A stretch of 64,000 bases of DNA, taken from positions 276,393 to 340,392 of IMG/VR virus record IMGVR_UViG_3300012931_000759; one strand, written 5' to 3'. Every line of letters starts with the position of its first letter. The stretch's first letter is position 1. The notes under the pieces are model-generated. The model did not search any database. It saw only the letters and a list, made by a program, of their open reading frames with translations, and was not told where the DNA came from. A program made the translations under genes and the position numbers. Of the stretch, positions 16,966 to 34,334 are shown piece by piece.

Positions 16966-18089
16966 TGGAAAATACAGGCGCAAGATACTATGTGTACGAG
17001 CTTACCGATCCAAGGGATGGATCCATATTCTATGTCGGTAAAGGCAGCGGCAGGAGGATTCACATACATGCGCTCTCCGTGAAAAGACAGGACAGTAGGT
17101 ACAAAAGGCATAATCCAAAGCTATTCAATAAGATATCGTCGATACTCTCCGATGGGGAAACTGTTGTAGAGATGATTGTTAGACGCTTTCATGACGAGGA
17201 TGAAGCCTATGTCTTCGAGACTAGAAGGATATTAGATATTGGTCTCAACAATCTCTGTAATATCCTTCCTGGAGGCAAAGGTGGTCCTTCTGGAGATGAC
17301 AATCCCTCAAAAAGACCAGAATTTAGGGAATTTATGCGTTCACTATGGAAGAACGAAGCATATAGATGCCAAATTACCGAGGCTTTGAGCAGGTTTTGGA
17401 ATGATCCGGACAATAAAAAAATGATGTCCGAAAGGCTCAAAGCGATATGGACAGAGGAAATGAGATTGGCGTGGAGTGCGGCAATGTCAGCTATGTGGGA
17501 TCGTCTCCCGGAGAGAAGAGCTGAATTAGCCATCCGAATGAGAGAAAACAATCCCTCACAGACCGATGAGGTCCGGCGCAAATTAAGCATAGCATGGACG
17601 GACGACAGGCGTGAAAAGTTCAGGGCAAAGATATCCGGTCTACACCATCGCTCAAAGACGCCGGAGACCAGGGCAAAAATAAAAGCTTCCTGGACAGAGC
17701 AGAAGAGGCGCAACTTGTCGGAGAGGATCAGGGCAACATGGACAGAGGAGAGGCGGGCTGCGCTCGGTAACAGGTTTCGCGGAACAACTGGTCCTAAAAG
17801 GAAAATCTCTGTCAATGATTCCTTAAGAATAAAGGATATGTATGCCTCTGGTATAAGCAGGAAAATCCTAGCATCCACATTTGACGTTAGCGTAACCACA
17901 ATACATAAAGTCATACATGGCAATTTCACAGACAAACCCTCGCGGATTTCAATAGATGCGTCAAATATCGGCGCCATACAAGAGATGAGAGAAAATGGAG
18001 CCTCGTATAGGGAAATAGCCTTGGAATTCGGCACAAGTGTAGGAGCGGTAAGAAATTTCCTCAAACGTCATTTTGGAGGCATAATATGA
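16965..18089 (+). CDS. Free-standing GIY-YIG homing endonuclease with NUMOD3-like W-repeats and HTH domains
   Basis: YYVYELTDPRDGSIFYVGKG; repeated (A/S)WTEE.R units; ASYREIALEFG HTH. Confidence 0.8.
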   Translation: MENTGARYYVYELTDPRDGSIFYVGKGSGRRIHIHALSVKRQDSRYKRHNPKLFNKISSILSDGETVVEMIVRRFHDEDEAYVFETRRILDIGLNNLCNILPGGKGGPSGDDNPSKRPEFREFMRSLWKNEAYRCQITEALSRFWNDPDNKKMMSERLKAIWTEEMRLAWSAAMSAMWDRLPERRAELAIRMRENNPSQTDEVRRKLSIAWTDDRREKFRAKISGLHHRSKTPETRAKIKASWTEQKRRNLSERIRATWTEERRAALGNRFRGTTGPKRKISVNDSLRIKDMYASGISRKILASTFDVSVTTIHKVIHGNFTDKPSRISIDASNIGAIQEMRENGASYREIALEFGTSVGAVRNFLKRHFGGII

Positions 18090-22258: not shown

Positions 22259-23055
22259 TGAGCCAACGACACCATTCGACCGTCGGAGTGTATATGCCAG
22301 CGCACAACGTTGTAGCATACATAGGCGACGCCATCAAGAGCATTATCGCCCAAGATTTCAAGGACTGGGAACTTGTGGTGCTGGATGACGCCTCGGATGA
22401 CGGCACTTTCGAGGCGGCCATGAAGGTGGCAAACGACCATTGTTGTGTTCTGCGCAACGACACCCGTTGCGGCCTGATCGGAAAGCTGAAGAACGAGAGC
22501 ATTGACCGCCTTTACAAACCTGAGTTTATCTGTCACGTGGGAGCGGACGATACGATCCCACCCGACTGCCTGTCATCGTTTGTGTCATTTATGCGTGTTA
22601 ATCTAGACCTGGTGGCGGCCTGTGGTACATTCGACTGTTTCGATGACGCAGGGAATAAGTGGATGATGCCGCACGTCCTGGCAGACAAGGGCTTCAGCAG
22701 AGAGAGACTTTTGCGATACATGAATTTCTACCCACAAAGATTTTATAGGAAGGAAGCTGTTGAAATAGTTGGAGGATACTCTAACACCCTGTCGTCAGCG
22801 GTTGACTACGATTTAGCTCTTAGGCTCGACGAAAAGTTCCCGGGCAGACTGGGACGACTTGAGGGAAAAATCACCTATCACTACCGGCAGCACCCCTTAC
22901 AGATTTCGAGGGCAGCTAGGTTGGAGCAAGATCTGAATGCCAAGGTAGCGCTCCAAACGGCTCTTGATCGTCGCAAAACCGGACAGGAGGTAGTGAACGA
23001 CAAGCCGCCTTTCCAGCTTAGGGAGCAAGAGGGGCACTTCATATGGGGAAAGTGA
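22258..23055 (+). CDS. GT2 glycosyltransferase
   Basis: MPAHN..YI..AI.SI..Q, LDDASDDGT, GADD, AVDYDL. Confidence 0.88.
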   Translation: MSQRHHSTVGVYMPAHNVVAYIGDAIKSIIAQDFKDWELVVLDDASDDGTFEAAMKVANDHCCVLRNDTRCGLIGKLKNESIDRLYKPEFICHVGADDTIPPDCLSSFVSFMRVNLDLVAACGTFDCFDDAGNKWMMPHVLADKGFSRERLLRYMNFYPQRFYRKEAVEIVGGYSNTLSSAVDYDLALRLDEKFPGRLGRLEGKITYHYRQHPLQISRAARLEQDLNAKVALQTALDRRKTGQEVVNDKPPFQLREQEGHFIWGK

Positions 23056-23951
23056 TGAGGAAAATCCTTGTTTGCGGTTCAGCTGGATTTCTGATGTCGA
23101 ACATGATGCGGTACATGTTATATCGCACAAAGGATTACGAGTTCGCCAGCATCGACCCATTGCGGAACAAGGAGGACCAGCGCAATATCTACATGCACAA
23201 GAGGCATTCATTCCATGTGGGTGATGTCGGCAATCCCGAACTTCTGGATAGGGTAGTACGCATCGAGAATCCGGACATTGTGGTTATAGGTACCGGAACG
23301 CCGCAACCTATTTACTCTAATGGTGCGGCTGTCGAGGATATTGTTCTCCCGACAGCCTCTGTATGCGACCTTTCCAAGATCTACGGCTTCCGTGTTGTGC
23401 GGCTAGTACCAGATGTGGATATTACAGATATGGGTAGCAGATCCCTGTGGAATCATGTCGAGACCATGGTGTTTGATGTGAGGGGCACAGTTTTACGTAT
23501 GCCAGTATGTTTTGGAAGGAGGGGTCGTGGCTTGTTCGAACAGGCGTTGTGTACAATCCTCTCAGGGCATGCTTGTTCAGGATGGAAACTAGATACTAGG
23601 AAAAGATGGTACGCCTATGCAGAGGATGTGGCTTCTATGCTCTGGTTTATTATGGAGAATCCAACTGTGCGCATTCCTGGACCACCTCCGATCCCAAACA
23701 TAGTCAGGATGCCAGCCCTTGGATGCGCCAATACAGCGGATATGATTGCTATGGCGCATCCTGTGTTGGGGTGGGGACAACCCTTTACATATAATATATA
23801 TATGGGAAAGGAAGAGCCAATATTACCAGGCTGGATGCCAGACTCTAAAGATCTTATTGATGCTGTTTTAAAAACAGCAAAATGGTATACAATGAATAAG
23901 TGGATTTTTGATACAGAAGGCTACATATCCCCTCTATCCGGAGGACGTTAA
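23055..23951 (+). CDS. Divergent RmlB-like NAD-dependent epimerase/dehydratase, possibly non-catalytic
   Basis: ILVCGSAGF Rossmann start, R.WYAYAEDVA, KTAKWY..N; no recognisable STDE or YxxxK. Confidence 0.55.
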   Translation: MRKILVCGSAGFLMSNMMRYMLYRTKDYEFASIDPLRNKEDQRNIYMHKRHSFHVGDVGNPELLDRVVRIENPDIVVIGTGTPQPIYSNGAAVEDIVLPTASVCDLSKIYGFRVVRLVPDVDITDMGSRSLWNHVETMVFDVRGTVLRMPVCFGRRGRGLFEQALCTILSGHACSGWKLDTRKRWYAYAEDVASMLWFIMENPTVRIPGPPPIPNIVRMPALGCANTADMIAMAHPVLGWGQPFTYNIYMGKEEPILPGWMPDSKDLIDAVLKTAKWYTMNKWIFDTEGYISPLSGGR

Positions 23952-23988
23952 AGAAATATCCGCGTGCGCGAGCACTGTCAAGCGGAAA

Positions 23989-25398
23989 ATGGAGAATACC
24001 AAGATGACCGAGGAAAAAACGAATCACGTCGTTGTGGAGGAAAGCACACGACCCGGCGCCCAGGCCGATGATGAATTGGAGCGCCACCTTGCGGAGCCCC
24101 CGCTGGATCCGGCAGTCCTGGAGCGTCTTCGCGCCAAGCAAAACACAGCAAAGGAGGCTACTGTACCGGCACCTGTGGTGCCGACGAAAACGGACCGTAG
24201 CCTGAACTTTGGAGTCGTCGGCCTAGGACAGGCCGGCTCCAGGATTGCTGAGGCTTTCCATGATCTCGGATACGATGCCTGCGTTATCAACACAGCAACG
24301 CAGGACCTGGAATTCATCGGTATGCCCGAGAACAGGAAACTATTTCTGCCCTTCGCTCTTGGAGGTGCGGGTAAGGAACTCGACAACGGGCGGCAGGCCG
24401 TCGAGCAGAATGCCGAGGCTATCATGACCAAACTACACGCGATGTTTGGTGACAAGAATCAGATGATGCTGCTTGCCGTCAGTGGCGGCGGCGGCACTGG
24501 GAGCGGCGGTGCTGAGGCCATCATTGGGCTCATGAGTACGCTTGGTAAACCAGTTGGTGTGATCTACGTTCTACCCATGGACACCGAAGATTCACTAACA
24601 AAGCATAATGCCGTCACGACATTGGGTAGGCTGGCCAAAATGACTAGCGCCGACACAATCTCTACTTTGATCGTGGTCGACAATGCGAAGATCGAACTAC
24701 TGTACCCAGGATTGAGCAAGGCGGCCTTCTGGCCAGCAGCTAATCGGGCGATCGTTGAGCCACTTCATCTGTTCAACAGTCTGTCGGCTATGGCTACGCC
24801 GTACGATAGTCTAGATTCGATGGACTTCGGACGTATCTTCACGGCTGGCGACTGTCTGATCTACGGGATGATGGAGGTTCCAAACTACAGGGAGACAACC
24901 GCCATCGCCGAGGCTGTCATGAGCCAACTTGAAGGAAGTCTCTTGGCGGGGGATTTCAATTTGAAAGAGGCTAGATTCGGCGGACTTCTTGTAGTAGGAA
25001 GCCCGCAGTCAATGGCAAGTTTGCCAGCGGAAAACATCCATTACGCGGCCCATATGGTGAGTGAGGCCTGCGATTATGCGCAACTGACTCGTGGAGTGTA
25101 TGAAATCCCAGACATTGGGGATGATGTTGTGCGCGTCTACACAATGTTTAGTGGTCTCGGACTTCCGGCGGCCAGGATCGACATCCTCAAGCAGGAGGCT
25201 GAGGACCAAATGCGGCAGATCCACGAGAAGGAGAAGACACGCGCCTCGCGGATGGAGGTTGATTACGGGGCTGGGGGCGGAACTGTTGCGAAGGCTCAGG
25301 AAATCCGCCGACTTATACAGAAGGACAAGAGTAGTTTCGGCAAGCTGACATCGAACGCCAACAGGCGTCCCGACATCATTGATCGCCGGAGGCGCTAA
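23989..25398 (+). CDS. Tubulin/FtsZ-family GTPase (PhuZ/TubZ-like by context); alternative start at 24004
   Basis: GVVGLGQAGSRIA, INTA.QDL, GGAGK, tubulin signature SGGGGTGSG, VVDN, LDSMDF. Confidence 0.88.
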   Translation: MENTKMTEEKTNHVVVEESTRPGAQADDELERHLAEPPLDPAVLERLRAKQNTAKEATVPAPVVPTKTDRSLNFGVVGLGQAGSRIAEAFHDLGYDACVINTATQDLEFIGMPENRKLFLPFALGGAGKELDNGRQAVEQNAEAIMTKLHAMFGDKNQMMLLAVSGGGGTGSGGAEAIIGLMSTLGKPVGVIYVLPMDTEDSLTKHNAVTTLGRLAKMTSADTISTLIVVDNAKIELLYPGLSKAAFWPAANRAIVEPLHLFNSLSAMATPYDSLDSMDFGRIFTAGDCLIYGMMEVPNYRETTAIAEAVMSQLEGSLLAGDFNLKEARFGGLLVVGSPQSMASLPAENIHYAAHMVSEACDYAQLTRGVYEIPDIGDDVVRVYTMFSGLGLPAARIDILKQEAEDQMRQIHEKEKTRASRMEVDYGAGGGTVAKAQEIRRLIQKDKSSFGKLTSNANRRPDIIDRRRR

Positions 25399-25410
25399 GC
25401 AGGAGTTCCT

Positions 25411-26949
25411 GTGCCGGTTCGGATCATCATCAATAATATTTGGTCGCGTATTAGCGGTTTGTCCGAGGCTGGCATAGGGCTCGTCGACGATCTTGACCTA
25501 CAGCTGAGTTTCCATATTGAAGGCTATCAGTATATGCGGGCTTTCAAGCAGGGTTGGTATGACAAGGAGAGCGGCCAATGGCGACACTGGGATGGTCGCA
25601 GACATCTGCTCAACCAGAAGATGGTGTTCCCCACCGGGCTTCTGACTAGGGTCACGGCGTTCCTCGATCGGCGTAAGGTCGCGTACGAGTTGAGCGACCA
25701 GCGCGCGCCCGTCGTGGGTGGTGGGCGTTTCGATGTGGCCGGGCGCACCCCTTGGCCGCACCAGAAGGCCGCAGTCGAAGCGGCGCTGAAGGCCGAGCGT
25801 GGAATTATCCGCATTGGGACAGGTGGTGGTAAAACATACATGGCGGCAATGATGATTGCCGAGTACAATATACCGACGATGATATACGTCGTCGGTAAAG
25901 ACCTACTCCACCAGTTTCACCGCGAGATGAGCAAGGCCCTTGGACGCAATAGTGTCGGTATCGTGGGAGATGGATACTGCGATGTGCGCAGATTTACTGT
26001 GTGTTCTGTATGGACTGCCGCCACAGCATTTGGACTGAAGTCTCATGTTTCATTGGATGACGAGGACTGGGCACCAGATATTGTGTCCATAGGCCCCAAA
26101 AGCAAGCGGGCCATTCAGAGTGCTGTGGAGAACGCCAACCTGGCCATTTTCGACGAGGCGCATTTTCTGGCGTGCGAAACAATCCAGGAGATCTTCAAGG
26201 CAAGCAAATGTTGTCGGTACATGTTTGGCATGACCGGCACGGATTGGAGGGATGATGGGGCAGATCTACTCCTAGAGGCCTCGTGCGGCGGGCGCATCTT
26301 CAATATGCCTGCGTCTAAACTTATAGAAATGGGGTACTTGGTCACGCCCAAGATAGCGCTGGTGGAGATGCCGCCGCTCGATGAGCCCTGCCCGAACAGC
26401 TGGAGCGCGGTGTACAGCCGCTACGTGACGCACAACGAAGTCCGGAACCAGGCGATTATTGATGGGGCGCGAAGGCTCATCAACATGGGAAGAAAGGTTC
26501 TGATCCTCGTGCGTTATCTTCCACATGGCCAAAAACTTGTCGACATGCTACAGGATTTGCCCGTATTCTTCGTCAATGGGAGATTGGACGGCGAAACCCG
26601 GCAGGCGGTCAAGGAGCGGTTCGAAAGGGGTGAACTGCGCTGCCTAGTGGCGTCGTCGGTTTTCGACATCGGCGTCGACATTCCGAGCCTAGACGCGCTA
26701 GTACTGGCCGGGGCGGGAAAGTCGACAGTACGCGTCCTACAGCGCATTGGCCGCGTTATACGGGCGGCGGAAGGCAAGAAGGACGCCATTGTGATGGACT
26801 TTATCGACAATGCCAAATATCTCGATAAGCACTCCGCAATCCGTATCGCCGTCTACGAGGCAGAGCCAGGGTTCAGGCTCAAGTTTCCGAAGGGGTTTGA
26901 CCACGACTCGCTCAAACGGATCAAAAAGCTCAAGGCGAAAATCGGCTGA
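25411..26949 (+). CDS. Superfamily 2 DNA helicase (UvsW/XPB-like)
   Basis: GTGGGKT, DEAH, GMTGT, GVDIP, QRIGRVIR, MDFID. Confidence 0.9.
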   Translation: MPVRIIINNIWSRISGLSEAGIGLVDDLDLQLSFHIEGYQYMRAFKQGWYDKESGQWRHWDGRRHLLNQKMVFPTGLLTRVTAFLDRRKVAYELSDQRAPVVGGGRFDVAGRTPWPHQKAAVEAALKAERGIIRIGTGGGKTYMAAMMIAEYNIPTMIYVVGKDLLHQFHREMSKALGRNSVGIVGDGYCDVRRFTVCSVWTAATAFGLKSHVSLDDEDWAPDIVSIGPKSKRAIQSAVENANLAIFDEAHFLACETIQEIFKASKCCRYMFGMTGTDWRDDGADLLLEASCGGRIFNMPASKLIEMGYLVTPKIALVEMPPLDEPCPNSWSAVYSRYVTHNEVRNQAIIDGARRLINMGRKVLILVRYLPHGQKLVDMLQDLPVFFVNGRLDGETRQAVKERFERGELRCLVASSVFDIGVDIPSLDALVLAGAGKSTVRVLQRIGRVIRAAEGKKDAIVMDFIDNAKYLDKHSAIRIAVYEAEPGFRLKFPKGFDHDSLKRIKKLKAKIG

Positions 26950-27631
26950 GTGTACGTGCGGCGCACGCAAGCAGGTGTCGTATGCCGGAGACGGGGTTGA
27001 ATACCCTGTTTTCTTTTGTCCGTCGTGCGGCCCGGACAAGCGCAACGAGTGGGAGCTTTGGTGGAGTGAGTACAGACTCCTGTGGCAGGATAACAGTAAA
27101 TGGGAAGAACCCAAACATCGCCTTCCGTGTCTGCTTGGGTTCTTCTGCGCAAAATACGCGGATCTGTACGGAAATCCGTTCCGCTTTACCTACGCTAGTC
27201 CAAATCCATACACAAGCAAGGATTTCATCATGGGCCGCCGCCTGCTCGCTATGTTCGATGGCGACGCCAAGGCGGCCAGGACCTATCTCAAGTGGGTTTT
27301 TGCGTTCAAGATCCGGAATACAAACTATGTGGTGAGCAGCCTTGGCTTCTTCGTGTCACAGAAATTTGTGGCTGAGTATATGCACGCCAAGGCGCGGTCG
27401 CGGGTGCTGCGGAGATCGAGCCCGCTTCCGACGGATTTCGTGGAGTGGTGCCTGGCCAACGAGCCGGAAATATTCGACCGCCAGGAGTTGGAGACATGGA
27501 ATGACCTGAACGGCCTGGTAACGCACGTAAAGCACTACGGGAAGGATGACACCGAAAGCAGGGTGGTAACTGAGGCGGTCCGCAGGGGAATGCTGCCGCG
27601 CGGTCCAGATTATGTTAGGCTGGAGGACTGA
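26810..27631 (+). CDS. Hypothetical protein with N-terminal CxC...CxxC; start uncertain
   Basis: Fills 26950-27631; CTC...CPSC; the only upstream ATG overlaps the helicase by 140 nt. Confidence 0.55.
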   Translation: MPNISISTPQSVSPSTRQSQGSGSSFRRGLTTTRSNGSKSSRRKSAECTCGARKQVSYAGDGVEYPVFFCPSCGPDKRNEWELWWSEYRLLWQDNSKWEEPKHRLPCLLGFFCAKYADLYGNPFRFTYASPNPYTSKDFIMGRRLLAMFDGDAKAARTYLKWVFAFKIRNTNYVVSSLGFFVSQKFVAEYMHAKARSRVLRRSSPLPTDFVEWCLANEPEIFDRQELETWNDLNGLVTHVKHYGKDDTESRVVTEAVRRGMLPRGPDYVRLED

Positions 27632-27635
27632 GAAG

Positions 27636-28136
27636 ATGGACATGATCGAAACGATGCGGCGAAGTGAAGCCGTGGAGATTTCGTTGAGGAACGGCCATGT
27701 GGTGTATGGGCGTTTCCTTGGGGTTTCGGGCAAGAATCTCATCTTGTGTGATCCGGACGGGGCGGTATTATTTGTGCCGTTTGCCGAGGAGAACGTGGCC
27801 TATATTAAGGTAGTTTCGGCCGATCCCGAGATCAGCCGGATGCTCGACCGTCTGTACGGAGACCGCCCATCCCACCAGCCGGTCGAGCCGCCAGAGGCCC
27901 AACCTGGTCGGCGGCTCCAGGATGAGCTGTCGCTGCGCCGTGTAGATCCGCCCGATCCTGAGCCGGGGAGAGTTGACGTACAGCCGGTCATCCTTGGCGG
28001 ACTGCCTGCCAACCGGCACGCCGCGATCGAAGAGGTCAAGGAGAGGCATCGCCACTCCAATACATTCGGGTCGAGTCAGACTGCGCCCAGGCCCGCATAT
28101 AGGCCGCGCATCCAGAGGGAAGACAAGGAAGAATGA
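27636..28136 (+). CDS. Hypothetical protein (Sm/Hfq-like N-terminal beta region possible)
   Basis: GGAGG RBS at 27622; VEISLRNGHVVYGRFLG; ATGA overlap downstream. Confidence 0.6.
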   Translation: MDMIETMRRSEAVEISLRNGHVVYGRFLGVSGKNLILCDPDGAVLFVPFAEENVAYIKVVSADPEISRMLDRLYGDRPSHQPVEPPEAQPGRRLQDELSLRRVDPPDPEPGRVDVQPVILGGLPANRHAAIEEVKERHRHSNTFGSSQTAPRPAYRPRIQREDKEE

Positions 28137-28813
28137 TTTCACAACGCAAGACTGAGGCCGAGAAGGCCCGCATAGTGGCGAACTGCGGCAGGTGTGGAGG
28201 GGTCGGCTGCGCGTACTGTCAGAAGTACTGTTCCTTCATAGACCGTATGTCCGAGGCGGGGATCCCGGTTGATTACTGGTTCCGCGACATGGAAAAATGG
28301 TACGGCGACCCCGATTTCGCAGAAGAATTCAAGGTTTCCTACCTATCCAGGATAGAGGCGGCCTACGCAGATGGTCGGGTTCTCTGCCTCCTTGGGCATA
28401 GGGGCGTCGGCAAGACTATGGCGGCGTGCTCGGCACTAAAGAAGGCTATCCTCTCCGGGTATTCGGCGCATTACACGTCGCTTGTCGACGCCGTTGATTT
28501 CCTCGTCTCCGGAGACGCCCACGACTACCGGCAGCTCCTGAAGTCTGTAGATTTCCTGGTGATGGACGAGGTTGACCAGCGGTTCTTTGACCACGTCAAC
28601 AGCCGCGCGCTGTATGGGAACCAGTTCGAGTATATTCTTAGGACCAGGACGCAGAACCGGCTTCCGATGATTATGTGCTCGAACTCTGAACGGGTTGAGG
28701 ACATCTTTTTCAACGACCAGGCGCAGGCGTCTTTTGTGTCCCTTGGGACACAGTTCTTCGCAACAATGCGCGTGGGTGGCCGGGATGCCAGACCCAAGGA
28801 GGGTGGGCAATGA
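28133..28813 (+). CDS. DnaC/IstB-like AAA+ ATPase (helicase loader) with Zn motif
   Basis: CGRCGGVGCAYC, Walker A GHRGVGKT, Walker B LVMDE, R.R...LP.I.CSN. Confidence 0.82.
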   Translation: MISQRKTEAEKARIVANCGRCGGVGCAYCQKYCSFIDRMSEAGIPVDYWFRDMEKWYGDPDFAEEFKVSYLSRIEAAYADGRVLCLLGHRGVGKTMAACSALKKAILSGYSAHYTSLVDAVDFLVSGDAHDYRQLLKSVDFLVMDEVDQRFFDHVNSRALYGNQFEYILRTRTQNRLPMIMCSNSERVEDIFFNDQAQASFVSLGTQFFATMRVGGRDARPKEGGQ

Positions 28814-30216
28814 GCGAGATTTCGCTGGACCTGAGGATGCTGGCGTACGCTCTTTCTGACAAAAGGATCCTCCTTGCCATGGCGACCACTGTGCGTGGAG
28901 AGCACTTCAATCCGGAATTTCGGGTACTGTGGGAGTTGGTCTCCAGGTGCTTTGCGAAGTACAAGGACATCCCCACGGCCAACGTACTTGAACATGTTGC
29001 CGACCTGGCGTGGGAGCAGCTAGTCGAGACATACCGCCGGGTTCTTGAGGCTATTCCATTGATCGACAGGCGGGAATATCCGGTCGACCTGGAGAAACTC
29101 AAGGCAAGGGCAAACGACAATATTCTCCGTAGGATGGGACAGCACGTCTACCAGAAGAACTGGAATGGACACGGGTTCGATAACCTACATGAGGCGAACA
29201 AGGCGTTACGTGAAACGGTCTCTAAGCTGGATCAGCTGTACAAGACGGAATCCTACAAGGAAGGCTCTTTGGCAGGGACTGCCTCCGAGGCCTGGGGTAA
29301 GTACCAGCGCACGAAACGTGATCCGGCCTCTGCCGCCGGGATTCATCTTGGATTTGCCGAGTTCGATCGCATCACTAACGGGATCAGGGAAGGCGAGCTT
29401 CTGCTCATTGGCGGCGAGTCCGGCACGGGCAAGTCGGCGCTCTCGATGAACATGGCTGTCAACGCGTGGCTTGGGGCCAACAAGGTGCCGACCGATCCGG
29501 ACGCGGATCCTAAAAACTTCGCTCCCGGCCGTGCGGTGGTGTACTTCTCGATCGAGATGCCCTACGAAGCCCTTGAGAGGCGGCTCCACGCGTGCGTTGC
29601 AGGGGTGCCACTTTACGGCATACGTGACGGCACGCTAGATGTAGCAGAGGAGGCCCGCTACCTGGCCGCCCTTCGGTTTATACAAAAGTACCCGCACCAG
29701 TTCCACATCATCGACATACCGCGCGGCGCGACCATGCGGTACATCGAGACCAAGTACCTGGAGCTATGCCAAGACAATACCGATGATCCCATCCATCTGT
29801 CTGTGGTCGATTACCTGAACCTGATGTCCATGGACGGCGAGGATGAGGGCGGCCCTGATTGGCTAAAAATCGGGAAACTGGGCGAGCAAGCGCATGAGTT
29901 CACCCGCGTCCATGGTACGCCCATGATCTCTCCGGTTCAACTAAACCGCCCGCCCAAGGAGGAGGCAGCAAGGGCCGCGAGGCCGGATCAGGATCGGATA
30001 GCGCGCAGCCTGATGCTGGTCCAGAACGCTAATATGGTTCTAAACATCGAGAAGCGCAAGGATGAGCATTTGACAAAAGACATGAGAGTTCACATAGTGA
30101 AGATGCGCGACGGCGAACAGGGCCTTTTCACCCTACAGAAGAGGCTGGATGCCATGCGGCTGTTCGATGACCCCACGGACTGGACACCCGGATCGTATGA
30201 GGCTGGAAACAATTAG
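28810..30216 (+). CDS. dnaB: Replicative DNA helicase
   Basis: GGESGTGKS, YFSIEMP, VVDYL, QLNR, KMRDGE. Confidence 0.9.
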   Translation: MSEISLDLRMLAYALSDKRILLAMATTVRGEHFNPEFRVLWELVSRCFAKYKDIPTANVLEHVADLAWEQLVETYRRVLEAIPLIDRREYPVDLEKLKARANDNILRRMGQHVYQKNWNGHGFDNLHEANKALRETVSKLDQLYKTESYKEGSLAGTASEAWGKYQRTKRDPASAAGIHLGFAEFDRITNGIREGELLLIGGESGTGKSALSMNMAVNAWLGANKVPTDPDADPKNFAPGRAVVYFSIEMPYEALERRLHACVAGVPLYGIRDGTLDVAEEARYLAALRFIQKYPHQFHIIDIPRGATMRYIETKYLELCQDNTDDPIHLSVVDYLNLMSMDGEDEGGPDWLKIGKLGEQAHEFTRVHGTPMISPVQLNRPPKEEAARAARPDQDRIARSLMLVQNANMVLNIEKRKDEHLTKDMRVHIVKMRDGEQGLFTLQKRLDAMRLFDDPTDWTPGSYEAGNN

Positions 30217-30231: not shown

Positions 30232-30519
30232 ATGCCGATATATGACTACATTTGCGAGGAATGCGGCCACGTCTTCGAGGAGTTTGCGCGTATCACGGAT
30301 CCTCCGATTAATAAATGTCCGGCCTGCGGCCTAACGGGACGCGTATGTCGCCTAATCTCGAGCGGCACAGTTGGCACAGTAGAGATGAACGGTCGGGAGT
30401 ACTTCAATCGTGTCTTAGAACCGGAGGCCAAGCGGATCGCCGAGAAGATTAAGCACGGGGATGATGCCGCAATCGCTGATGTTTTTGGCGAGGGCCCTCC
30501 TGCAAAAAAAGTCGGTTGA
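30232..30519 (+). CDS. FmdB-family zinc ribbon protein
   Basis: MPIYDYICEECG..FE...CPACG...RLIS. Confidence 0.85.
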   Translation: MPIYDYICEECGHVFEEFARITDPPINKCPACGLTGRVCRLISSGTVGTVEMNGREYFNRVLEPEAKRIAEKIKHGDDAAIADVFGEGPPAKKVG

Positions 30520-30544
30520 ATTCCGGCTGCCCTGTGCGTATAAT
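30516..30544 (+). promoter_or_regulatory. Sigma70-type promoter upstream of prkA
   Basis: TTGAAT(30516-30521)-17 nt-TATAAT(30539-30544). Confidence 0.6.
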
Positions 30545-30614
30545 CTCTTTAAACAGGGGAAGGATTGCGTCCCGCTCCGGCCAAAGGCCGGGAAAAACCG
30601 CGAAAGGATGGAGC

Positions 30615-33600
30615 ATGGAAGTGATCAACACCGGCAAAAAGGGCAAGAAGACCAAGGATCAGGAAGAGACGGCGGAGAACGGGGCGCTCGACCTTGTTGC
30701 CCTCATTGAGCAATGTGCGGCCGAAGAGGATCTTGAGCCATGGGAGGGCACGCTTCGCGATTATCTCCCGATGGTACAGGATGATTGTACACTGGCGGAC
30801 ACGGCCCACGCAAGGCTGTGGCGCATGATTGAGACAGTCGGCATCAAGTTCGACGACAAGGATGAGCGGAAAGAGCATCCCGAGTACAGCTTTTTCACCA
30901 ACGAGTTGTTCGGCATCAATGACACGCTGGCCAGCGTCATGGAATATCTCAGGGCTGCCGCAGCTGGATCCGACGTCGCCCGGCGAATCCTGCTCCTATA
31001 CGGGCCCACGAGTTCCGGTAAATCGCAGTTCGCAATCCTCCTTAAGGAGGGTCTGGAGAAGTTCTCGCGCACCAAGGCCGGGCGCATGTTTGCCCTCAAA
31101 GATTGCCCGATGCACGAGAACCCCTTGAACGCGGTGCCCAAGGCTGCGAGGGAGCAATTGAAGGCTAAGTATGGCCTCAATATTGAAGGTGACTTGTGTC
31201 CGCGCTGTGCCTACAGGCTCAAGACCGAGTTCAACGGCGACTTCATGGCTCTGCCGGTCGAGCGCGTGCTCCTGTCCGAGGCCAACCGAGTGGGTATCGG
31301 CACGTTCCAGCCGGCCGATCCCAAGTCGCAGAACCAGTCCGAGCTGACGGGCTCCGTCAACTTCGCCAAGCTGGCCGAGCTGGGCTCGGAGTCGCACCCG
31401 CTGGCTTTCGACTTCAACGGCGAGCTGAACAAGGCCAACCGCGGCATGATGGAGTTCATCGAGCTCCTGAAGGTGGACCGCAAGTTCAGGCACATCCTCC
31501 TGACGCTGGCGCAGGAGAAGCGCATCAAGGCACAGAATTTTCCGCTCATTTTCGCGGACCTAGTAGTAATCAGCCATAGCGTGTCTGGCGATATGCCTGT
31601 TCCCTATAGAGAGAATGGGTTGGTTCGATTTACCACAATGAGGCAACTGTGTGATGCCAACAACACCAACATCGAGGTTCTTGCTGCCGATGCCAATGGC
31701 AAGCCCGCATGGACGAAAGTGAAAGGATTCTATCGTCACCAGTTCTCTGGCAAAATGGTGAAGACCGTACAGGTTGATGGTGTTGTCAACACTACTTGGC
31801 ATCATTCTTTGATTGGCAAGGCGGACAATGCGCCTTTTCTGCCCGAAACGCTTCAAGATGTCCTGGCATTCAGGAATGTTCCTGAACAAACCGAACTTGG
31901 GACATTCGATGTTCCGGTTCCCGATTCGTTGTCCTATTTACCCGTTAATACCCCAGGTATCTTGTCCACGGATTGCTGTGTTCCCGAGCAATCCTTTGCT
32001 CGTGTTAAACCAACTGGCAACAAGAAAAGTGATGGAGAATACGGCAAATATTGGATCAAAACTCGCTACGATTCTTGTTCCGAGGAAGCGAAAGACATTG
32101 TTGCTCTTCTGTGTTGGTATGCTACAGAGGGTCATGTCTCGAATGAGCATGCGATCATTTCCCAAGCCAACCTGGAAACTCTATTTTCCCTGAAGAAGAG
32201 AGCGGAGAGGGTTTCTTCAGCCATAGGGTCTGTGTTTGATCGATCGGATGAGGAGGATCACACTAGCCGCCTTCACCTTTCGGCAAGGGTGTGGCGGGAA
32301 ATTCTTGAGCACAATTGCGGAAGATATAGCGAAAACAAGCGTTTGCCAGATTTTGTGTTCAATTTGCCTCGTGAGTTGCGTGAATTCGCTTTACGAGAAC
32401 TCATAAAGGGAGATGGTCAGACTATGCCATCGTTCGCATCCTGCGAGGAATATGCCAAAAAGTACTTTGCCTTCAAAACGACAAGCATTATTCTGGCAGC
32501 CCAATTCTGCTATTTGGCAAGTTCGCTTGGGTACGATTTTGGCGTACATCATGGATATACGAAAAAGGGAAAGGATTTCTTTGGCATCAATTATCGGGAA
32601 CGAACGAAGCCCATACTAAGGAAAAACAGGATCGAGACCGTTGAGGTGTCCGACAGCGAAGTATTCGATATCGAATGCGTGGACAATCATTCTTTTGTGG
32701 CTGGCGTTGGCAACCTTGTTTGCCACAATACGAATGAGACCGAGTACCTCAAGTTCCTCGCCCAGAAGGAGGAGGAAGCGCTCCACGACCGCCTGTGGGT
32801 CATCAAGTTCCCCTACAACCTGCGCCTCGAGGACGAGATCAAGATCTACGAGAAGCTCATTTCCAGGGCGGCCGGGTTCCAAGGTATCCACATCGCGCCA
32901 CACACCCTGCGCGTGGCGGCGATGTTCGCCATCCTGAGCAGGCTGGAGGAGTCCAAGGACCAGAAGTTCACCCTGCTGACCAAGATGCGCCTGTACAACG
33001 GCGAGAAGGTCGACGGGGCCGGCAAGGAGGACGAGAAGAGGCTGCGCGAGGCTGCCGAGCGCGAGGGCATGGACGGCATCAGCCCCCGCTACATCGTGAA
33101 CCGCATCTCGGCCTGCTTCACCAAGCACGGTCGGACCTACATCACCCCGATGGACATCGTCCGCAGCATCAAGGAGGGGTTCTCCACCAACGCCAAGCTG
33201 TCGAAAGAGGACATCTCGCGGTTCGAGAACATTATCACGACGGTGATGGAGGAGTACAACAAGATCGCAACAAACGAGGTTCAGAAGGCTTTCTTCCTGA
33301 ATTTCGAGCACGAGATCAAGGATCTGCTCAATAACTACATCGACAACGTTGGTGCCTATCTGGACGATGACAAGATCCAAAACCACTGGGGCGAAATGGA
33401 GGAGCCGAACCACCGCCTCATGAGGAGTGTCGAGGAGAAAATTGGCATCACCGACGGCGGCAAGGATGCTTTCCGCCAAGAGGTGTACCGCAAGATGATC
33501 AAGAGCAAGAGCGAGACGGGCGACTACGACTACCAGAACCATCCGCGCCTGAAGGAGGCGCTACAGAAGCAGTTGTTCGAGGAGCGCAGCGACATCATCA

Positions 33601-33752
33601 GGCTGACGGTGTCCGTGCGGAATCCTGATGCCGATGCGCTCAAGCGGCTGAACGAGGTCATCAAGACCTTGAGCGAAAAATGCGGTTACACTCCGGAGAG
33701 CGCCAATGATTTGCTGCGTTATGTCAGCAGCATATTGGCGAAAAACAGCTAG
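30615..33752 (+). CDS. prkA: PrkA/YeaG AAA+ protein kinase, intein-containing
   Basis: LLLYGPTSSGKS, CPMHENPL, GIGTFQP.D, GELNKANRGMMEFIE, H|TNETEY, HIAPHTL, EGMDGISPRY. Confidence 0.92.
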   Translation: MEVINTGKKGKKTKDQEETAENGALDLVALIEQCAAEEDLEPWEGTLRDYLPMVQDDCTLADTAHARLWRMIETVGIKFDDKDERKEHPEYSFFTNELFGINDTLASVMEYLRAAAAGSDVARRILLLYGPTSSGKSQFAILLKEGLEKFSRTKAGRMFALKDCPMHENPLNAVPKAAREQLKAKYGLNIEGDLCPRCAYRLKTEFNGDFMALPVERVLLSEANRVGIGTFQPADPKSQNQSELTGSVNFAKLAELGSESHPLAFDFNGELNKANRGMMEFIELLKVDRKFRHILLTLAQEKRIKAQNFPLIFADLVVISHSVSGDMPVPYRENGLVRFTTMRQLCDANNTNIEVLAADANGKPAWTKVKGFYRHQFSGKMVKTVQVDGVVNTTWHHSLIGKADNAPFLPETLQDVLAFRNVPEQTELGTFDVPVPDSLSYLPVNTPGILSTDCCVPEQSFARVKPTGNKKSDGEYGKYWIKTRYDSCSEEAKDIVALLCWYATEGHVSNEHAIISQANLETLFSLKKRAERVSSAIGSVFDRSDEEDHTSRLHLSARVWREILEHNCGRYSENKRLPDFVFNLPRELREFALRELIKGDGQTMPSFASCEEYAKKYFAFKTTSIILAAQFCYLASSLGYDFGVHHGYTKKGKDFFGINYRERTKPILRKNRIETVEVSDSEVFDIECVDNHSFVAGVGNLVCHNTNETEYLKFLAQKEEEALHDRLWVIKFPYNLRLEDEIKIYEKLISRAAGFQGIHIAPHTLRVAAMFAILSRLEESKDQKFTLLTKMRLYNGEKVDGAGKEDEKRLREAAEREGMDGISPRYIVNRISACFTKHGRTYITPMDIVRSIKEGFSTNAKLSKEDISRFENIITTVMEEYNKIATNEVQKAFFLNFEHEIKDLLNNYIDNVGAYLDDDKIQNHWGEMEEPNHRLMRSVEEKIGITDGGKDAFRQEVYRKMIKSKSETGDYDYQNHPRLKEALQKQLFEERSDIIRLTVSVRNPDADALKRLNEVIKTLSEKCGYTPESANDLLRYVSSILAKNS
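31578..32729 (+). mobile_element. Intein (Ser1...His-Asn, +1 Thr) with LAGLIDADG endonuclease in prkA
   Basis: SVSGD start, TTWHHS block B, WYATEG and LIKGDG motifs, VFDIEC..NHSF...CHN end; removal restores VISH-TNETEY; lower GC. Confidence 0.9.
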
Positions 33753-34334
33753 ATGGCCAATGAGATTTGTGCCAGATGCGGCAGACCGAGAAAAGTGGCC
33801 GAAAGAACGCCAGATGGTCCAATTTGCCACAACTGCTACAAAAAAGAGCACATTGAGCCATGCCGGTTCTGTGGGAAACAGAAAGCAGTTGCTGCCCGAG
33901 ATGATAACGGCGCGGCCATCTGCGACAACTGTAACAAAGAACACAACAAATGTTCGTGTTACGTGTGCCATGAAGTTAGACAAGTTCGTGCGCGTGCGGA
34001 AAACGGACAGCCACTGTGTCTTGCTTGTCATCGTTTGACTAATCTTGGACAGTTTTTCGCATCGTACAAGAGAGGAGCCAGCCTGCGCGGTCATATATTC
34101 GAACTCACGTTGGATGAGTTTGAACAATTGGTGCGCAGGCCATGCTGGTACTGTGGACGCTACAACCGGGGAGAAATTTTCAGCGGCGTGGACAGAATCG
34201 ACAGTTCATGCGGCTATGTTCGAACCAATGTGCTACCGTGCTGCGGCGAGTGTAACCTGATGAAAGGTTCCTTGTCCAAGGACGCGTTCCTTGCTAGCAT
34301 TGTGCGCATAGCCAGACATTTGGAAAACAAATGA
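33753..34334 (+). CDS. HNH endonuclease with three tandem N-terminal zinc-ribbon repeats
   Basis: CARC..CHNC, CRFC..CDNC, CYVC..CLAC; then FELTLDEF..PCWYCG..GVDRIDS..GY..NVLPCCGECNLMK. Confidence 0.75.
   Translation: MANEICARCGRPRKVAERTPDGPICHNCYKKEHIEPCRFCGKQKAVAARDDNGAAICDNCNKEHNKCSCYVCHEVRQVRARAENGQPLCLACHRLTNLGQFFASYKRGASLRGHIFELTLDEFEQLVRRPCWYCGRYNRGEIFSGVDRIDSSCGYVRTNVLPCCGECNLMKGSLSKDAFLASIVRIARHLENK

What the first reader, a model, noticed from the sequence alone, without database searches (positions are those of the whole stretch)
23989..30216. Tubulin/FtsZ-family gene heading a DNA replication block
Seen: tubulin signature GGGTGSG with N- and C-terminal extensions, followed by an SF2 helicase, two unknowns, a DnaC-like ATPase and DnaB. 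No dcw genes (ftsA, ftsQ, mur) are nearby. Established: PhuZ/TubZ position phage DNA or the phage nucleus. Inference: a spindle-like positioning system, with 26810..27631 or 27636..28136 as candidate adaptor or initiator. No shell protein is recognisable in this window.
Basis: partly seen in the sequence, partly recalled or inferred. Interest (0 to 1): 0.6.

Follow-up and report, generated by a model that had tools for sequence, protein, structure and literature searches.

The report
TubZ-like tubulin in a huge phage
A 340-kb wetland phage carries a tubulin gene of the plasmid-partition (TubZ/RepX) type, not the phage-nucleus (PhuZ) type or cell-division FtsZ; it is conserved at the head of the replication genes in a large clade of uncultivated huge phages, but it lacks the usual DNA-binding partner and its cargo is unknown.

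Summary
Window 23989/24004..25398 (+) encodes a 464-469-aa tubulin/FtsZ-superfamily GTPase with an intact G-box (GGGTGSG) and T7-loop aspartates. It has a ~65-aa N-terminal extension and a conserved basic C-terminal tail. Downstream lie a UvsW-like SF2 helicase, two unknown genes, a DnaC-like loader and DnaB.

The window is the last 64 kb of a 340-kb viral record from a wetland metagenome. Sequence profiles and the predicted fold both put the protein nearest to TubZ/RepX of Bacillus plasmids. FtsZ scores lower, and PhuZ is remote.

The record has no chimallin shell protein, no phiKZ-type RNA polymerase, no integrase and no ParA/ParB. It does encode a sigma-70-family factor. A phage-nucleus spindle is therefore not supported.

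More than 800 homologues exist, on phage-like contigs of up to about 330 kb for the tubulin and 452 kb for its neighbour unk1. All nine related contigs examined keep the order sugar cluster, tubulin, helicase, unk1, unk2, DnaC-like, DnaB.

Characterised TubZ systems, phage G and three related plasmids have a small TubR-like gene just upstream. This family has none, and no centromere-like repeats were found.

My best reading is a GTP-driven filament, made with the replication genes, that positions replicating phage DNA. The filament part rests on homology; the cargo is inferred. No adaptor was identified.

The parts
23043..23951 (+). Epimerase-like gene (302 aa), the last gene of a ~22-kb glycan-biosynthesis cluster. 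Homologues sit directly upstream of the tubulin gene in several relatives.
   Evidence: Pfam Epimerase 1e-12, N-terminal Rossmann part only. tblastn finds homologues next to the tubulin gene in L002, L003 and L011. The same architecture is seen in L021 and the P0164 contig.
23989..25398 (+). Tubulin/FtsZ-superfamily GTPase of TubZ/RepX type (469 aa from ATG 23989; likely start ATG 24004, 464 aa).
   Evidence: PF00091 scores 50.7 bits. The family profile matches TubZ-Bc/RepX 4ei7 at 4.7e-27 over the full length. The AF2 model has pLDDT 87.8. Foldseek and VIA both rank TubZ first.
23989..24183 (+). Family-specific N-terminal extension (about residues 1-65), predicted as two helices (23-34, 41-56). 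It is shorter in one subclade and replaced by a GT1 domain in the fusion relative P0117.
   Evidence: Structural alignments to TubZ begin at model residue 64-66.
24487..24507 (+). G-box / tubulin signature GGGTGSG (residues 167-173).
   Evidence: Read directly from the sequence. G168, G169 and G171 are invariant, and G167, T170, S172 and G173 are at least 90% conserved in 116 homologues.
24802..24834 (+). T7 (synergy) loop YDSLDSMDFGR, with D276 and D279 invariant.
   Evidence: It aligns with RepX 'FDASEF' and M. jannaschii FtsZ 'NVDFAD'.
25168..25395 (+). Long C-terminal helix (H11-like, residues 394-422) followed by a flexible tail. The tail carries the conserved motif KS.FGKLT.NA and a basic end, DRRKR/DRRRR.
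   Evidence: Secondary structure from AF2. The profile alignment to TubZ-Bt runs to about residue 437, and VIA aligns to residue 433. The last 12 residues have a mean net charge of +4.6 across 116 homologues.
25411..26949 (+). UvsW-like SF2 DNA helicase (512 aa), 12 nt downstream of the tubulin stop codon.
   Evidence: Helicase_C 1e-13, ResIII 2e-12, UvsW_N 4e-5 (below cut-off). PHROG_16 DNA helicase 2e-74.
26897..27631 (+). Unknown 1 (about 244 aa; the ORF is open from 26810). It has an N-terminal CxC...CxxC zinc ribbon and a ~190-aa all-helical domain. It is clade-specific and always lies between the helicase and the DnaC-like gene.
   Evidence: Orthologues are found in all loci examined. 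AF2 pLDDT 91.5. No fold relative: Foldseek E > 1, VIA Z <= 5.2 to AAA+ lid-like bundles, atlas TM <= 0.33.
27636..28136 (+). Unknown 2 (166 aa): a small beta-rich N-terminal domain, possibly Sm/Hfq-like, plus a Pro/Arg-rich disordered tail. It is poorly conserved.
   Evidence: Alignment A2 shows 21-68% identity. tblastn finds only the closest relative. Atlas leads to Hfq-like and DUF6897 clusters are weak (feature score 0.80; TM 0.67-0.73 by target).
28133..28813 (+). DnaC/IstB-like AAA+ helicase loader (226 aa).
   Evidence: IstB_IS21 9.5e-7. PHROG_50 DnaC-like helicase loader 3e-14.
28810..30216 (+). DnaB-type replicative helicase (468 aa).
   Evidence: DnaB_C 4.8e-29. PHROG_19 7.6e-52.
30232..30519 (+). 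Small FmdB-type zinc-ribbon protein (95 aa) that closes the conserved block before PrkA.
   Evidence: Zn_ribbon_8 2.7e-15. It is present in all relatives.

Best explanation
Identity (shown or strongly supported). The gene encodes a TubZ/RepX-like member of the tubulin/FtsZ superfamily. It is carried by an uncultivated virus record of 340 kb or more from a wetland. It belongs to a family of more than 800 proteins found essentially only on phage-like contigs. In every contig of this clade examined, the gene lies at the junction between a variable glycan-biosynthesis cluster and a conserved replication block (helicase, unk1, unk2, DnaC-like, DnaB).

Mechanism, inferred from homology. The protein binds GTP through the G-box. 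It polymerises head to tail, so the T7-loop aspartates (D276, D279) of one subunit complete the GTPase site of the next. This gives dynamic, treadmilling filaments like those of TubZ. As in TubZ, the long C-terminal helix and the flexible, conserved, strongly basic tail should take part in filament contacts and carry the cargo-binding site.

Function, inferred. The gene is packed tightly against the replication genes (12-nt gap to the helicase; overlapping genes further downstream), so it is probably made together with them. Its most likely role is to move, spread or position replicating phage DNA, or the replication factory, in the host cell. It would do this without a chimallin nucleus and without a TubR/tubC-type centromere module. 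The tail would bind either DNA directly or an adaptor that has not been recognised.

My confidence is about 0.9 for the TubZ-like identity, about 0.75 for filament formation, and about 0.4 for DNA or replication-factory positioning as the cargo function. The single figure given for this explanation (0.5) is for the whole statement taken together.
For: Superfamily and catalytic motifs:
- PF00091 is above cut-off.
- The G-box and T7 aspartates are invariant in 116 homologues.

TubZ affinity:
- As a single sequence against PDB, TubZ-Bc/RepX 4ei7 scores 7e-14 over residues 68-404, and FtsZ about 5e-8.
- As a family profile, 4ei7 scores 4.7e-27 and TubZ-Bt 3-8e-16, both over the full length including the C-terminal helix. 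FtsZ scores 5e-17 or weaker and matches chiefly the N-terminal part of the fold. PhuZ is not among the 60 best matches shown.
- Relatives at 47-50% identity pass Pfam TubZ-like_C (29-32 bits against a cut-off of 26).
- For the AF2 model (pLDDT 87.8), Foldseek ranks 4ei7 first (E 2e-24) and TubZ-Bt has the highest TMq, 0.65.
- VIA Z-scores are TubZ-Bc 38.3, TubZ-Bt 38.1, CetZ 35-37 and FtsZ 32 or less.
- The only phage and plasmid hits are phage G gp138 and Bacillota 'plasmid replication protein' (RepX-like) genes.

Viral, non-cellular setting:
- The window is part of a virus record.
- A pattern scan of one genome for each of 185,579 species found only two loci.
- Two wetland metagenome studies hold the sequence.

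Synteny:
- The gene order is conserved in L002, L003, L005, L007, L008, L009 and L011, and in two contigs reached independently through unk1.

Not a nucleus system:
- There is no chimallin and no phiKZ-type RNAP, and a sigma factor is present.

From the literature:
Against: - The defining TubZ partners are missing. No small wHTH gene lies upstream, although pBtoxis, three RepX-like plasmids and phage G all have one. No iteron array lies near the gene or elsewhere in the record.
- The window's own protein does not reach Pfam TubZ-like_C on its own.
- CetZ is structurally almost as close as TubZ.
- The synteny is shared by related phages, so it may be inherited gene order rather than independent evidence of a functional link.
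- The gene also borders the sugar cluster, and in one lineage it is fused to a glycosyltransferase.
- Nothing here shows expression, polymerisation or DNA binding.
- The record is only 84% complete.
Confidence: 0.5

Rival explanations
1. PhuZ-like spindle. The filaments centre or rotate a proteinaceous phage nucleus and deliver capsids to it, as in Chimalliviridae.
For: It is a tubulin in a jumbo phage. PHROG 'tubulin PhuZ' gives a weak N-terminal hit (9e-8). Tubulin homologues in huge phages have been labelled PhuZ in the literature (PMC7162821).
Against: - A chimallin HMM (phrog_4795) finds nothing in 340 kb at E <= 1, whereas phiKZ scores 1.8e-232.
- A phiKZ RNAP subunit HMM finds nothing, although it does detect cellular RNAPs.
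- The phage encodes a sigma-70-family factor, which implies use of host RNAP.
- Solved PhuZ matches at E 0.5 only. Predicted PhuZ models give TMq 0.44-0.52, against 0.63-0.65 for TubZ.
- The C-terminal tail is basic. From my own knowledge (Kraemer 2012), the PhuZ tail is acidic.
Confidence: 0.04
2. Classical type III partition. The phage persists as a low-copy episome (carrier state or pseudolysogeny), and the tubulin segregates it to daughter cells, as TubZ does for Clostridium phage c-st and for Bacillus plasmids.
For: The closest characterised relatives are partition/replication tubulins. c-st TubZ aligns at Z 32. A review proposes this role for some jumbo-phage tubulins (PMC7824862).
Against: - There is no TubR-like gene upstream and no centromere repeats.
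- No integrase, ParA or ParB was found.
- The gene is embedded in a replication module together with RNR, ThyX, PhoH and an amidase (lysis-type) gene, the make-up of a virulent phage.
- A pattern scan of 185,579 species genomes found almost no copies in cellular assemblies.
Confidence: 0.15
3. Host cell-biology takeover. The protein acts on the host rather than on phage DNA. It might interfere with or replace host FtsZ to stop division and enlarge the cell, or remodel cell shape like CetZ, possibly tethered to the membrane by its amphipathic, basic tail.
For: FtsZ and CetZ are close structural relatives (Z 30-37). The family is annotated 'FtsZ' by its sources. The tail (a hydrophobic motif followed by a basic end) resembles in form the FtsZ C-terminal peptide plus basic variable region; this comparison comes from my own knowledge.
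Against: It scores far below the FtsZ equivalog cut-off (40.5 against 295 bits). It is separated from FtsZ in the tree. Profile and fold both prefer TubZ, including the TubZ-specific long C-terminal helix. There is no FtsA or ZipA-like partner nearby.
Confidence: 0.12
4. Scaffold for glycan or virion assembly. The filament organises the phage's large glycosylation machinery, or traffics particles, rather than DNA.
For: In every relative the gene directly follows the sugar cluster. The epimerase-like gene upstream is conserved even in the most distant relative, L011. One lineage carries a GT1-tubulin fusion protein on 9 contigs.
Against: The fusion is confined to one lineage and could be a neutral merger of neighbouring genes. 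The gene directly upstream differs among relatives (formyltransferase, GT2, metallo-beta-lactamase-fold), whereas the downstream replication block is constant. No tubulin is known to scaffold glycosyltransferases.
Confidence: 0.1

Closest known systems
TubZ / RepX of Bacillus cereus-group plasmids (pBtoxis TubZ-Bt; B. cereus TubZ, chain titled RepX in PDB 4ei7) - type III plasmid partition
   Same: It is the best sequence and fold match over the whole protein: 4ei7 at 4.7e-27 and Z 38.3; TubZ-Bt at Z 38.1 with alignment to residue 433. The shared features are the G-box, a T7 loop with a D..D/E pattern, a long C-terminal helix and a flexible basic tail.
   Different: Identity is only about 22-26%. 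It has an extra ~65-aa N-terminal extension. There is no TubR gene upstream and there are no tubC-like repeats. It is on a huge phage with no sign of lysogeny, not a low-copy Firmicute plasmid. Its own protein misses the Pfam TubZ-like_C model, although relatives pass it.
TubZ of Clostridium botulinum phage c-st (TubZRC plus TubY)
   Same: It is a phage-borne TubZ-type tubulin, with profile E 4e-14 and Z 32.1.
   Different: c-st is a plasmid prophage with TubR, tubC and TubY. None of these were recognised here, and the genome shows no integrase or ParA/ParB.
Bacillus phage G gp138 (annotated 'FtsZ-like')
   Same: It is the only cultured-phage homologue found (25% identity, E 1e-11 to 7e-22). 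It is also a tubulin on a jumbo or mega phage without chimallin.
   Different: Phage G has a 98-aa weakly wHTH-like gene immediately upstream, in a TubR-like position. Its tubulin is not next to the replication helicases (DnaB is about 80 kb away), and it lacks the N- and C-terminal extensions (376 aa).
PhuZ of Chimalliviridae (phiKZ gp39, 201phi2-1 gp59)
   Same: It is a phage tubulin presumed to organise phage replication in space.
   Different: The sequence and fold relation is remote. There is no chimallin and no multisubunit phage RNAP. The tail is basic rather than acidic.
FtsZ and archaeal CetZ
   Same: They share the superfamily fold (Z 30-37). The T4 loop has an FtsZ-like GGAGxxxxxG pattern.
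   Different: It fails the FtsZ equivalog model. There is no dcw context. It is separated from FtsZ in the tree. It has the TubZ-type C-terminal helix and is borne by a virus.

Membership tests
Tubulin/FtsZ superfamily | GTPase domain matching PF00091 above the gathering score | tested here: met
   50.7 bits against a cut-off of 33, E 3.4e-13. The genome-wide six-frame search finds this single copy.
Tubulin/FtsZ superfamily | G-box signature GGGTG(S/T)G and acidic T7-loop residues that complete the neighbour's active site | tested here: met
   GGGTGSG is at residues 167-173. D276 and D279 are invariant in 116 homologues.
Tubulin/FtsZ superfamily | GTP-dependent head-to-tail polymerisation | not testable with these tools
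   This is inferred from conserved motifs and the fold only. It needs biochemistry.
TubZ (type III partition tubulin) | Closest sequence and structure relation to solved TubZ over both domains and the long C-terminal helix H11 | tested here: met
   The profile matches 4ei7 at 4.7e-27 (positions 69-410) and TubZ-Bt at about 4e-16 (63-437). Foldseek ranks 4ei7 first. VIA Z is 38.3 and 38.1, ahead of CetZ (36.7) and FtsZ (32.2 or less).
TubZ (type III partition tubulin) | Pfam TubZ-like_C (PF22453) C-terminal domain | tested here: inconclusive
   The window protein gives no hit even at E <= 5. Three relatives at 47-50% identity pass (30.3, 29.0 and 32.1 bits against a cut-off of 26) and one is sub-threshold.
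TubZ (type III partition tubulin) | Flexible C-terminal tail that binds the partner (TubR-DNA, TubY) | tested here: inconclusive
   A tail is present, conserved and basic (mean +4.6 over the last 12 residues). Its binding partner is unknown.
TubZ (type III partition tubulin) | Small DNA-binding adaptor gene (tubR) immediately upstream in the same operon | tested here: not met
   The upstream gene is a 302-aa epimerase-like enzyme. pBtoxis, three RepX-like plasmids and phage G all have a 98-119-aa ORF there. No relative of the phage G upstream ORF family is in the genome.
TubZ (type III partition tubulin) | Centromere-like iterons (tubC) near the operon | tested here: not met
   No tandem or clustered repeats above chance lie in 20-32 kb. 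TRF over the whole record finds only a coding 30-bp repeat at the contig edge.
PhuZ (phage-nucleus tubulin) | Membership of the PhuZ sequence family | tested here: not met
   phrog_4733 scores 9.3e-8 on the N-terminal 150 residues only, against 4.6e-118 for phiKZ PhuZ. Solved phiKZ PhuZ matches at E 0.5. BFVD PhuZ models give TMq 0.44-0.52.
PhuZ (phage-nucleus tubulin) | Co-occurrence with chimallin and phage multisubunit RNA polymerases | tested here: not met
   phrog_4795 and phrog_3015 find nothing in G000 at E <= 1, and both find phiKZ. Caveat: the record is estimated 84% complete.
FtsZ (cell division) | Meets the FtsZ equivalog model, lies in a dcw gene neighbourhood and is chromosomal | tested here: not met
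   TIGR00065 scores 40.5 bits against a cut-off of 295.2. The record is viral. The neighbours are sugar and replication genes. The protein is separated from E. coli and MAG FtsZ by a 99/100 branch.
CetZ (archaeal cell-shape tubulin) | Groups with archaeal CetZ | tested here: inconclusive
   Structural Z of 35-37 is close to TubZ, but profile E-values of 1.8e-15 and weaker are well behind RepX. No CetZ sequences could be put in the tree.

The most novel reading that the evidence does not exclude
This is a third kind of phage tubulin system. It would be a TubZ-derived cytomotive filament that has shed the TubR/tubC centromere module. It would have become a fixed component of the replication module of a large clade of 300-450-kb environmental phages. 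There it would organise a shell-less replication factory, or act in replication itself as was first claimed for RepX. It would reach its cargo through its conserved basic tail or through an unrecognised clade-specific adaptor such as the zinc-ribbon protein at 26897..27631.
Probability: 0.3. Interest if true: 0.7.

Novelty: new variant of a known kind. Interest (0 to 1): 0.45.

Why it matters
Phage tubulins are so far understood through two models. PhuZ works with the chimallin nucleus. TubZRC partitions plasmid prophages. This gene stands for a large, purely environmental family: more than 800 proteins, on phage-like contigs of up to about 330 kb for the tubulin and 452 kb for its neighbour unk1. 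It fits neither model cleanly. It is TubZ-like in sequence and fold, but it has no TubR, no centromere repeats and no shell protein, and it always sits beside the replication genes.

If it does organise replicating DNA in huge phages that have no nucleus, then spatial organisation by a cytoskeleton would be a wider feature of large-genome phages than Chimalliviridae alone. It would also offer a simpler system for asking how a tubulin engages DNA without a dedicated centromere adaptor. In practical terms, the current database labels for this family ('cell division GTPase FtsZ', 'PhuZ') are imprecise.

Tried and rejected
- **Co-fold of the tubulin (alignment A3) with unknown 1 (alignment A4)**. 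The verdict was 'no answer' (score 0.00 against a mark of 0.32; controls not run). This is neither for nor against binding.
- **Fold searches for unknown 1.** Foldseek against PDB gave nothing below E 1. VIA wide gave only Z <= 5.2 to AAA+ lid-like helical bundles such as Hda, clamp-loader delta and ClpA, which is below the level that means more than a common helical arrangement. ESM Atlas by shape gave TM <= 0.33. Atlas by features gave only phage hypotheticals and a zinc-ribbon (NrdR) lead.
- **Unknown 2.** There are no Pfam, PHROG or NCBIfam hits. Only weak Hfq/Sm-like leads appeared.
- **Centromere hunt.** TRF and repeat finders around the gene and over the genome found nothing. The 30-bp x 5.5 array at the start of the record is a coding 10-aa repeat at the contig edge.
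- **Promoter and terminator scan of 14-34 kb.** Counts equal the shuffled expectation, so no operon boundary can be called.
- **Tree**. The family is clearly outside FtsZ. Its relations to TubZ, RepX, phage G and PhuZ are unresolved because of very long branches (PhuZ 8.3).
- **Genes inserted between the tubulin and the helicase in some relatives.** They are not homologous to one another and so are not a hidden conserved partner.
- **Sequencing runs.** Only wetland DNA runs hold the locus and there are no RNA runs, so read laying was not used and expression is untested.
- **The large HMMER library search.** I did not run it, because the word search and family scans had already placed the protein.

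Full report
**Setting**

The window is bases 276393-340392 of a single 340,392-bp virus record. The record is linear, and CheckV estimates it at 84% complete. Two wetland-metagenome studies hold the locus. Almost all genes in the window lie on the + strand and are tightly packed.

The gene order along the window is as follows.
- Bases ~1.8-24 kb hold a glycan-biosynthesis cluster: GT1/GT4, GT2, a DegT aminotransferase, a nucleotidyltransferase, a methyltransferase, a GDP-mannose dehydratase and several epimerases. A GIY-YIG homing endonuclease interrupts it.
- Next comes the tubulin gene, then the replication block.
- After the block come PrkA, HNH, DUF444 and SpoVR; a SLOG protein; a sigma-70-family factor; a ribonucleotide reductase with an intein; PIN-PhoH; large unknown proteins; an M24 peptidase; an amidase; and ThyX.

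**The observation**

ORF 23908..25398 contains in-frame ATGs at 23989 and 24004. ATG 24004 is the likelier start: GGAG at 23991-23994 lies 9 nt upstream, and the equivalent Met is the start in at least 90% of homologues. Numbering below is from 23989.

The protein matches Pfam Tubulin above threshold. It carries GGGTGSG at residues 167-173 and a T7 loop, YDSLDSMDFGR, whose D276 and D279 are invariant in 116 homologues.

The AlphaFold model was built on a 116-sequence alignment and is confident (mean pLDDT 87.8, pTM 0.79). Its parts are:
- a two-helix N-terminal extension (residues 23-56, lower confidence);
- the two-domain tubulin core (about 66-390);
- a 29-residue C-terminal helix (394-422);
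- a tail with two short helices and a basic terminus.

- a UvsW-like SF2 helicase (25411..26949);
- two unknown genes;
- a DnaC/IstB-like AAA+ protein (28133..28813);
- DnaB (28810..30216).

The spacing is tight. There are 12 nt between the tubulin and the helicase. Unknown 1 starts inside the helicase 3' end. Most of the following junctions overlap by 4 nt.

**Which tubulin?**

Four lines of evidence agree.

1. Single sequence against PDB:
   - B. cereus TubZ (chain titled 'RepX') scores 7e-14 over residues 68-404;
   - archaeal FtsZ and CetZ score about 5e-8;
   - c-st TubZ scores 1.5e-7;
   - phiKZ PhuZ scores 0.5.
2. Family profile against PDB:
   - 4ei7 scores 4.7e-27;
   - TubZ-Bt scores 3-8e-16, aligned over the full length to about residue 437;
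   - FtsZ scores 5e-17 or weaker and matches chiefly the N-terminal part of the fold;
   - PhuZ is absent from the 60 best matches shown.
3. Fold:
   - Foldseek ranks 4ei7 first (E 2e-24), and TubZ-Bt has the highest query-normalised TM, 0.65.
   - VIA-align Z-scores are 38.3 for TubZ-Bc (344 residues aligned, rmsd 3.1) and 38.1 for TubZ-Bt (361 residues aligned, rmsd 5.0). They are 36.7 and 35.3 for CetZ2 and CetZ1, 32.2 or less for FtsZ, and 32.1 for c-st TubZ.
   - In the viral structure library, the only close hit is an 'FtsZ' of an uncultured Caudovirales phage (41% identity), which is a family member. PhuZ models follow at E about 1e-12 and TMq 0.44-0.52.
4. Family models:
   - Relatives at 47-50% identity pass Pfam TubZ-like_C, although the window's own protein does not.
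   - The NCBIfam FtsZ equivalog scores 40.5 bits against a cut-off of 295.

A 27-taxon maximum-likelihood tree separates the family from two FtsZ sequences by a 99/100 branch. In that tree the TubZ-Bt/RepX-like/phage G group is the nearest outgroup. The deep nodes are weak, and PhuZ sits on an 8.3-substitution branch. No CetZ or eukaryotic tubulins could be included.

That criterion is not met.

**Distribution and synteny**

A word-based search found 863 homologues at E <= 1e-3 among the 8,000 candidates scored. The 120 best are 46-87% identical. Sources call them 'cell division GTPase FtsZ' or leave them unnamed, and many lie on contigs of 100-330 kb. tblastn against cultured phages finds only Bacillus phage G gp138 (25% identity). 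Against plasmids it finds only Bacillota 'plasmid replication protein' genes, which are RepX-like. A pattern scan of one genome for each of 185,579 species found two loci. One is a 145-kb contig in a Gammaproteobacteria MAG (41% identity, with the same synteny). The other is a 27%-identical TubZ-like gene in a Bacillota MAG.

I examined nine related contigs, with tubulin identity from 83% down to 41%. Two of them were reached independently through unknown 1. All nine show the same order:
- a variable sugar cluster;
- the tubulin;
- lineage-specific insertions in some relatives (none to several genes);
- the helicase;
- unknown 1;
- unknown 2 (seen in eight of the nine; the L011 locus ends before it);
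- the DnaC-like gene;
- DnaB;
- the zinc-ribbon protein;
- PrkA in most relatives, but not in L007 or L008.

The inserted genes are unrelated to one another. The tubulin is therefore a fixed gene at the upstream edge of the conserved replication block in this clade. Because these phages are related, I treat the synteny as inherited order, not as independent proof of a functional link. One lineage has a GT1 glycosyltransferase-tubulin fusion (813 aa, seen on 9 contigs). In it the GT domain takes the place of the N-terminal extension.

**What is missing**

Canonical TubZ systems have a small winged-helix adaptor gene directly upstream, plus centromere iterons. pBtoxis shows this (TubR, 104 aa, MarR-like; a MerR-family gene lies beyond it). 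Three RepX-like plasmids each have a 105-119-aa ORF just upstream. Phage G gp137 (98 aa, weak wHTH hits) abuts gp138.

Here the upstream gene is a 302-aa epimerase-like protein. No relative of the phage G upstream ORF family is in the genome. No repeat arrays lie near the gene or elsewhere in the record, apart from a coding repeat at the contig edge.

The record also lacks chimallin and a phiKZ-type RNAP subunit. The positive controls worked: phiKZ scored 1.8e-232 and 1.5e-252, and the RNAP model also detects bacterial RNAPs. The record lacks tyrosine integrase, ParB and ParA. It encodes a sigma-70-family factor. All these absences carry the caveat that the record is 84% complete.

**The two unknown genes**

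*Unknown 1.* The ORF is open from 26810. The likely start is TTG 26897, which gives 244 aa, against 243-245 aa in relatives whose genes overlap the helicase by 47-53 nt. It has a CxC...CxxC zinc ribbon, which the more distant orthologues lack. The ribbon is followed by a conserved, Trp-rich, all-helical domain. Forty-eight homologues were found by word search. All are hypothetical proteins with no Pfam domain.

The model is confident (pLDDT 91.5) but has no convincing structural relative. Foldseek gives E > 1. VIA gives Z <= 5.2, mostly to AAA+ lid-type bundles of replication proteins, which is too weak to interpret. The atlas search gives TM <= 0.33.

*Unknown 2.* This gene evolves fast. Its N-terminal ~65 residues look Sm/Hfq-like both by eye and by weak atlas leads. 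The rest is Pro/Arg-rich and disordered.

Neither protein resembles a known centromere-binding adaptor. Their fixed place between the helicase and the loader suggests primosome or initiator accessory roles, but that is inference from position only.

**Mechanism**

Shown or strongly supported:
- a TubZ-like fold;
- intact nucleotide-binding and catalytic motifs under strong conservation;
- a TubZ-type C-terminal helix and tail;
- a viral setting, and a fixed position beside the replication genes;
- no nucleus hallmarks.

Inferred from homology to TubZ (PMC5322520; PMC2875224):
- GTP-dependent head-to-tail assembly into dynamic filaments;
- a tail that contributes to filament contacts and carries the partner-binding site.

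Inferred from context: the protein is expressed together with the replication genes, and it positions or spreads replicating phage DNA, or a shell-less replication factory. The conserved tail motif (KS.FGKLT.NA ... DRRKR; mean net charge +4.6 over the last 12 residues) could bind DNA directly, bind an unrecognised adaptor, or bind membrane. I cannot tell these apart here. RepX was first described as a replication protein of pXO1 (as cited in PMC2875224). That makes the replication-block position suggestive, but it proves nothing.

**Rivals**

- A PhuZ-type nucleus spindle is close to excluded.
- Classical episome partition is possible, but it lacks TubR and tubC, and the genome shows no sign of lysogeny or a carrier state.
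- Manipulation of host division or cell shape is not excluded, given the structural closeness to CetZ and FtsZ.
- A link to the glycan cluster is hinted at by the fusion protein and by the conserved epimerase-like neighbour.

**Comparison and novelty**

Tubulin homologues in huge phages have been noted before, usually labelled PhuZ or FtsZ (PMC7162821; PMC7824862; phage G in PMC12484599). I found no description of this family or of its particular features in the literature searched.

It is best filed as a new variant of the TubZ kind. It works like TubZ at the level of the polymer, but it fails the system-level membership features (TubR, tubC, plasmid setting).

Interest is moderate. The identity is unsurprising. 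The TubR-less, shell-less arrangement, built into the replication module and widespread among uncultivated huge phages, is a testable lead.

**Limits**

- There are no expression data: no RNA runs hold the locus.
- There is no biochemistry.
- The tree has limited taxon sampling.
- The record is incomplete.
- The only co-fold job gave no answer (see the tried-and-rejected field).

Noticed in passing
window 1812-23951: A ~22-kb glycan-biosynthesis cluster ends exactly at the tubulin gene here and in every relative. It contains GT1/GT4, two GT2s, a DegT aminotransferase, a nucleotidyltransferase, a methyltransferase, a GDP-mannose 4,6-dehydratase and several epimerases. Its gene content varies between relatives, and its target (virion, DNA or host surface) is unknown.
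   Followed up: partly
locus L009 8001-10442 (protein P0117): In one marine or freshwater lineage the tubulin is fused to an N-terminal GT1 glycosyltransferase domain (813 aa). The identical protein is seen on 9 contigs. The GT domain replaces the usual N-terminal extension.
   Followed up: partly
window 30516-33752: PrkA is 1078 aa here, against 646-653 aa in relatives. An insert of about 378 aa (residues ~356-733) splits the AAA and C-terminal domains. It gives only a sub-threshold intein hit (E 0.047), but a relative (L003) has an annotated intein plus LAGLIDADG in its PrkA. The PrkA-DUF444(YeaH)-SpoVR trio is conserved in the clade.
   Followed up: partly
window 33753-34334: An HNH/EndoVII-like endonuclease gene sits between PrkA and DUF444. 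Relatives L021 and the P0164 contig have PrkA directly followed by DUF444, so this is probably a mobile insertion.
   Followed up: no
window 38185-42591: The ribonucleotide reductase large subunit (1468 aa) is interrupted by an intein with a LAGLIDADG homing endonuclease.
   Followed up: no
window 16881-18089: A GIY-YIG plus HTH homing-endonuclease-like gene lies inside the sugar cluster, in a low-GC patch (0.475 against about 0.55).
   Followed up: no
window 26897-27631: Unknown 1 has a confidently predicted fold (pLDDT 91.5) with no detectable relative in PDB or the ESM Atlas. Its start lies inside the 3' end of the helicase gene, an overlap conserved in relatives. The source's own gene call (218 aa, starting at 26975) cuts the zinc ribbon in half.
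   Followed up: yes
G000 bases 1-165 (outside the window): A 30-bp tandem repeat (5.5 copies, 94% match) lies at the very start of the viral record. It reads through as a 10-aa protein repeat (SQPHVEAWGS-like) in an ORF that runs off the contig, and it may be why the assembly stopped there.
   Followed up: partly
window 36978-38175 and 43794-45080: Three regulatory-type genes follow the replication block: a YspA-type SLOG protein, a sigma-70-family factor, and a PIN-PhoH fusion. The sigma factor argues that the phage uses the host RNA polymerase.
   Followed up: no
locus L006 6686-8113 (Bacillus phage G gp137-gp138): The tubulin of phage G is abutted upstream by a 98-aa ORF with weak winged-helix hits. 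This is a TubR-like arrangement that the phage G papers consulted here do not appear to mention.
   Followed up: partly
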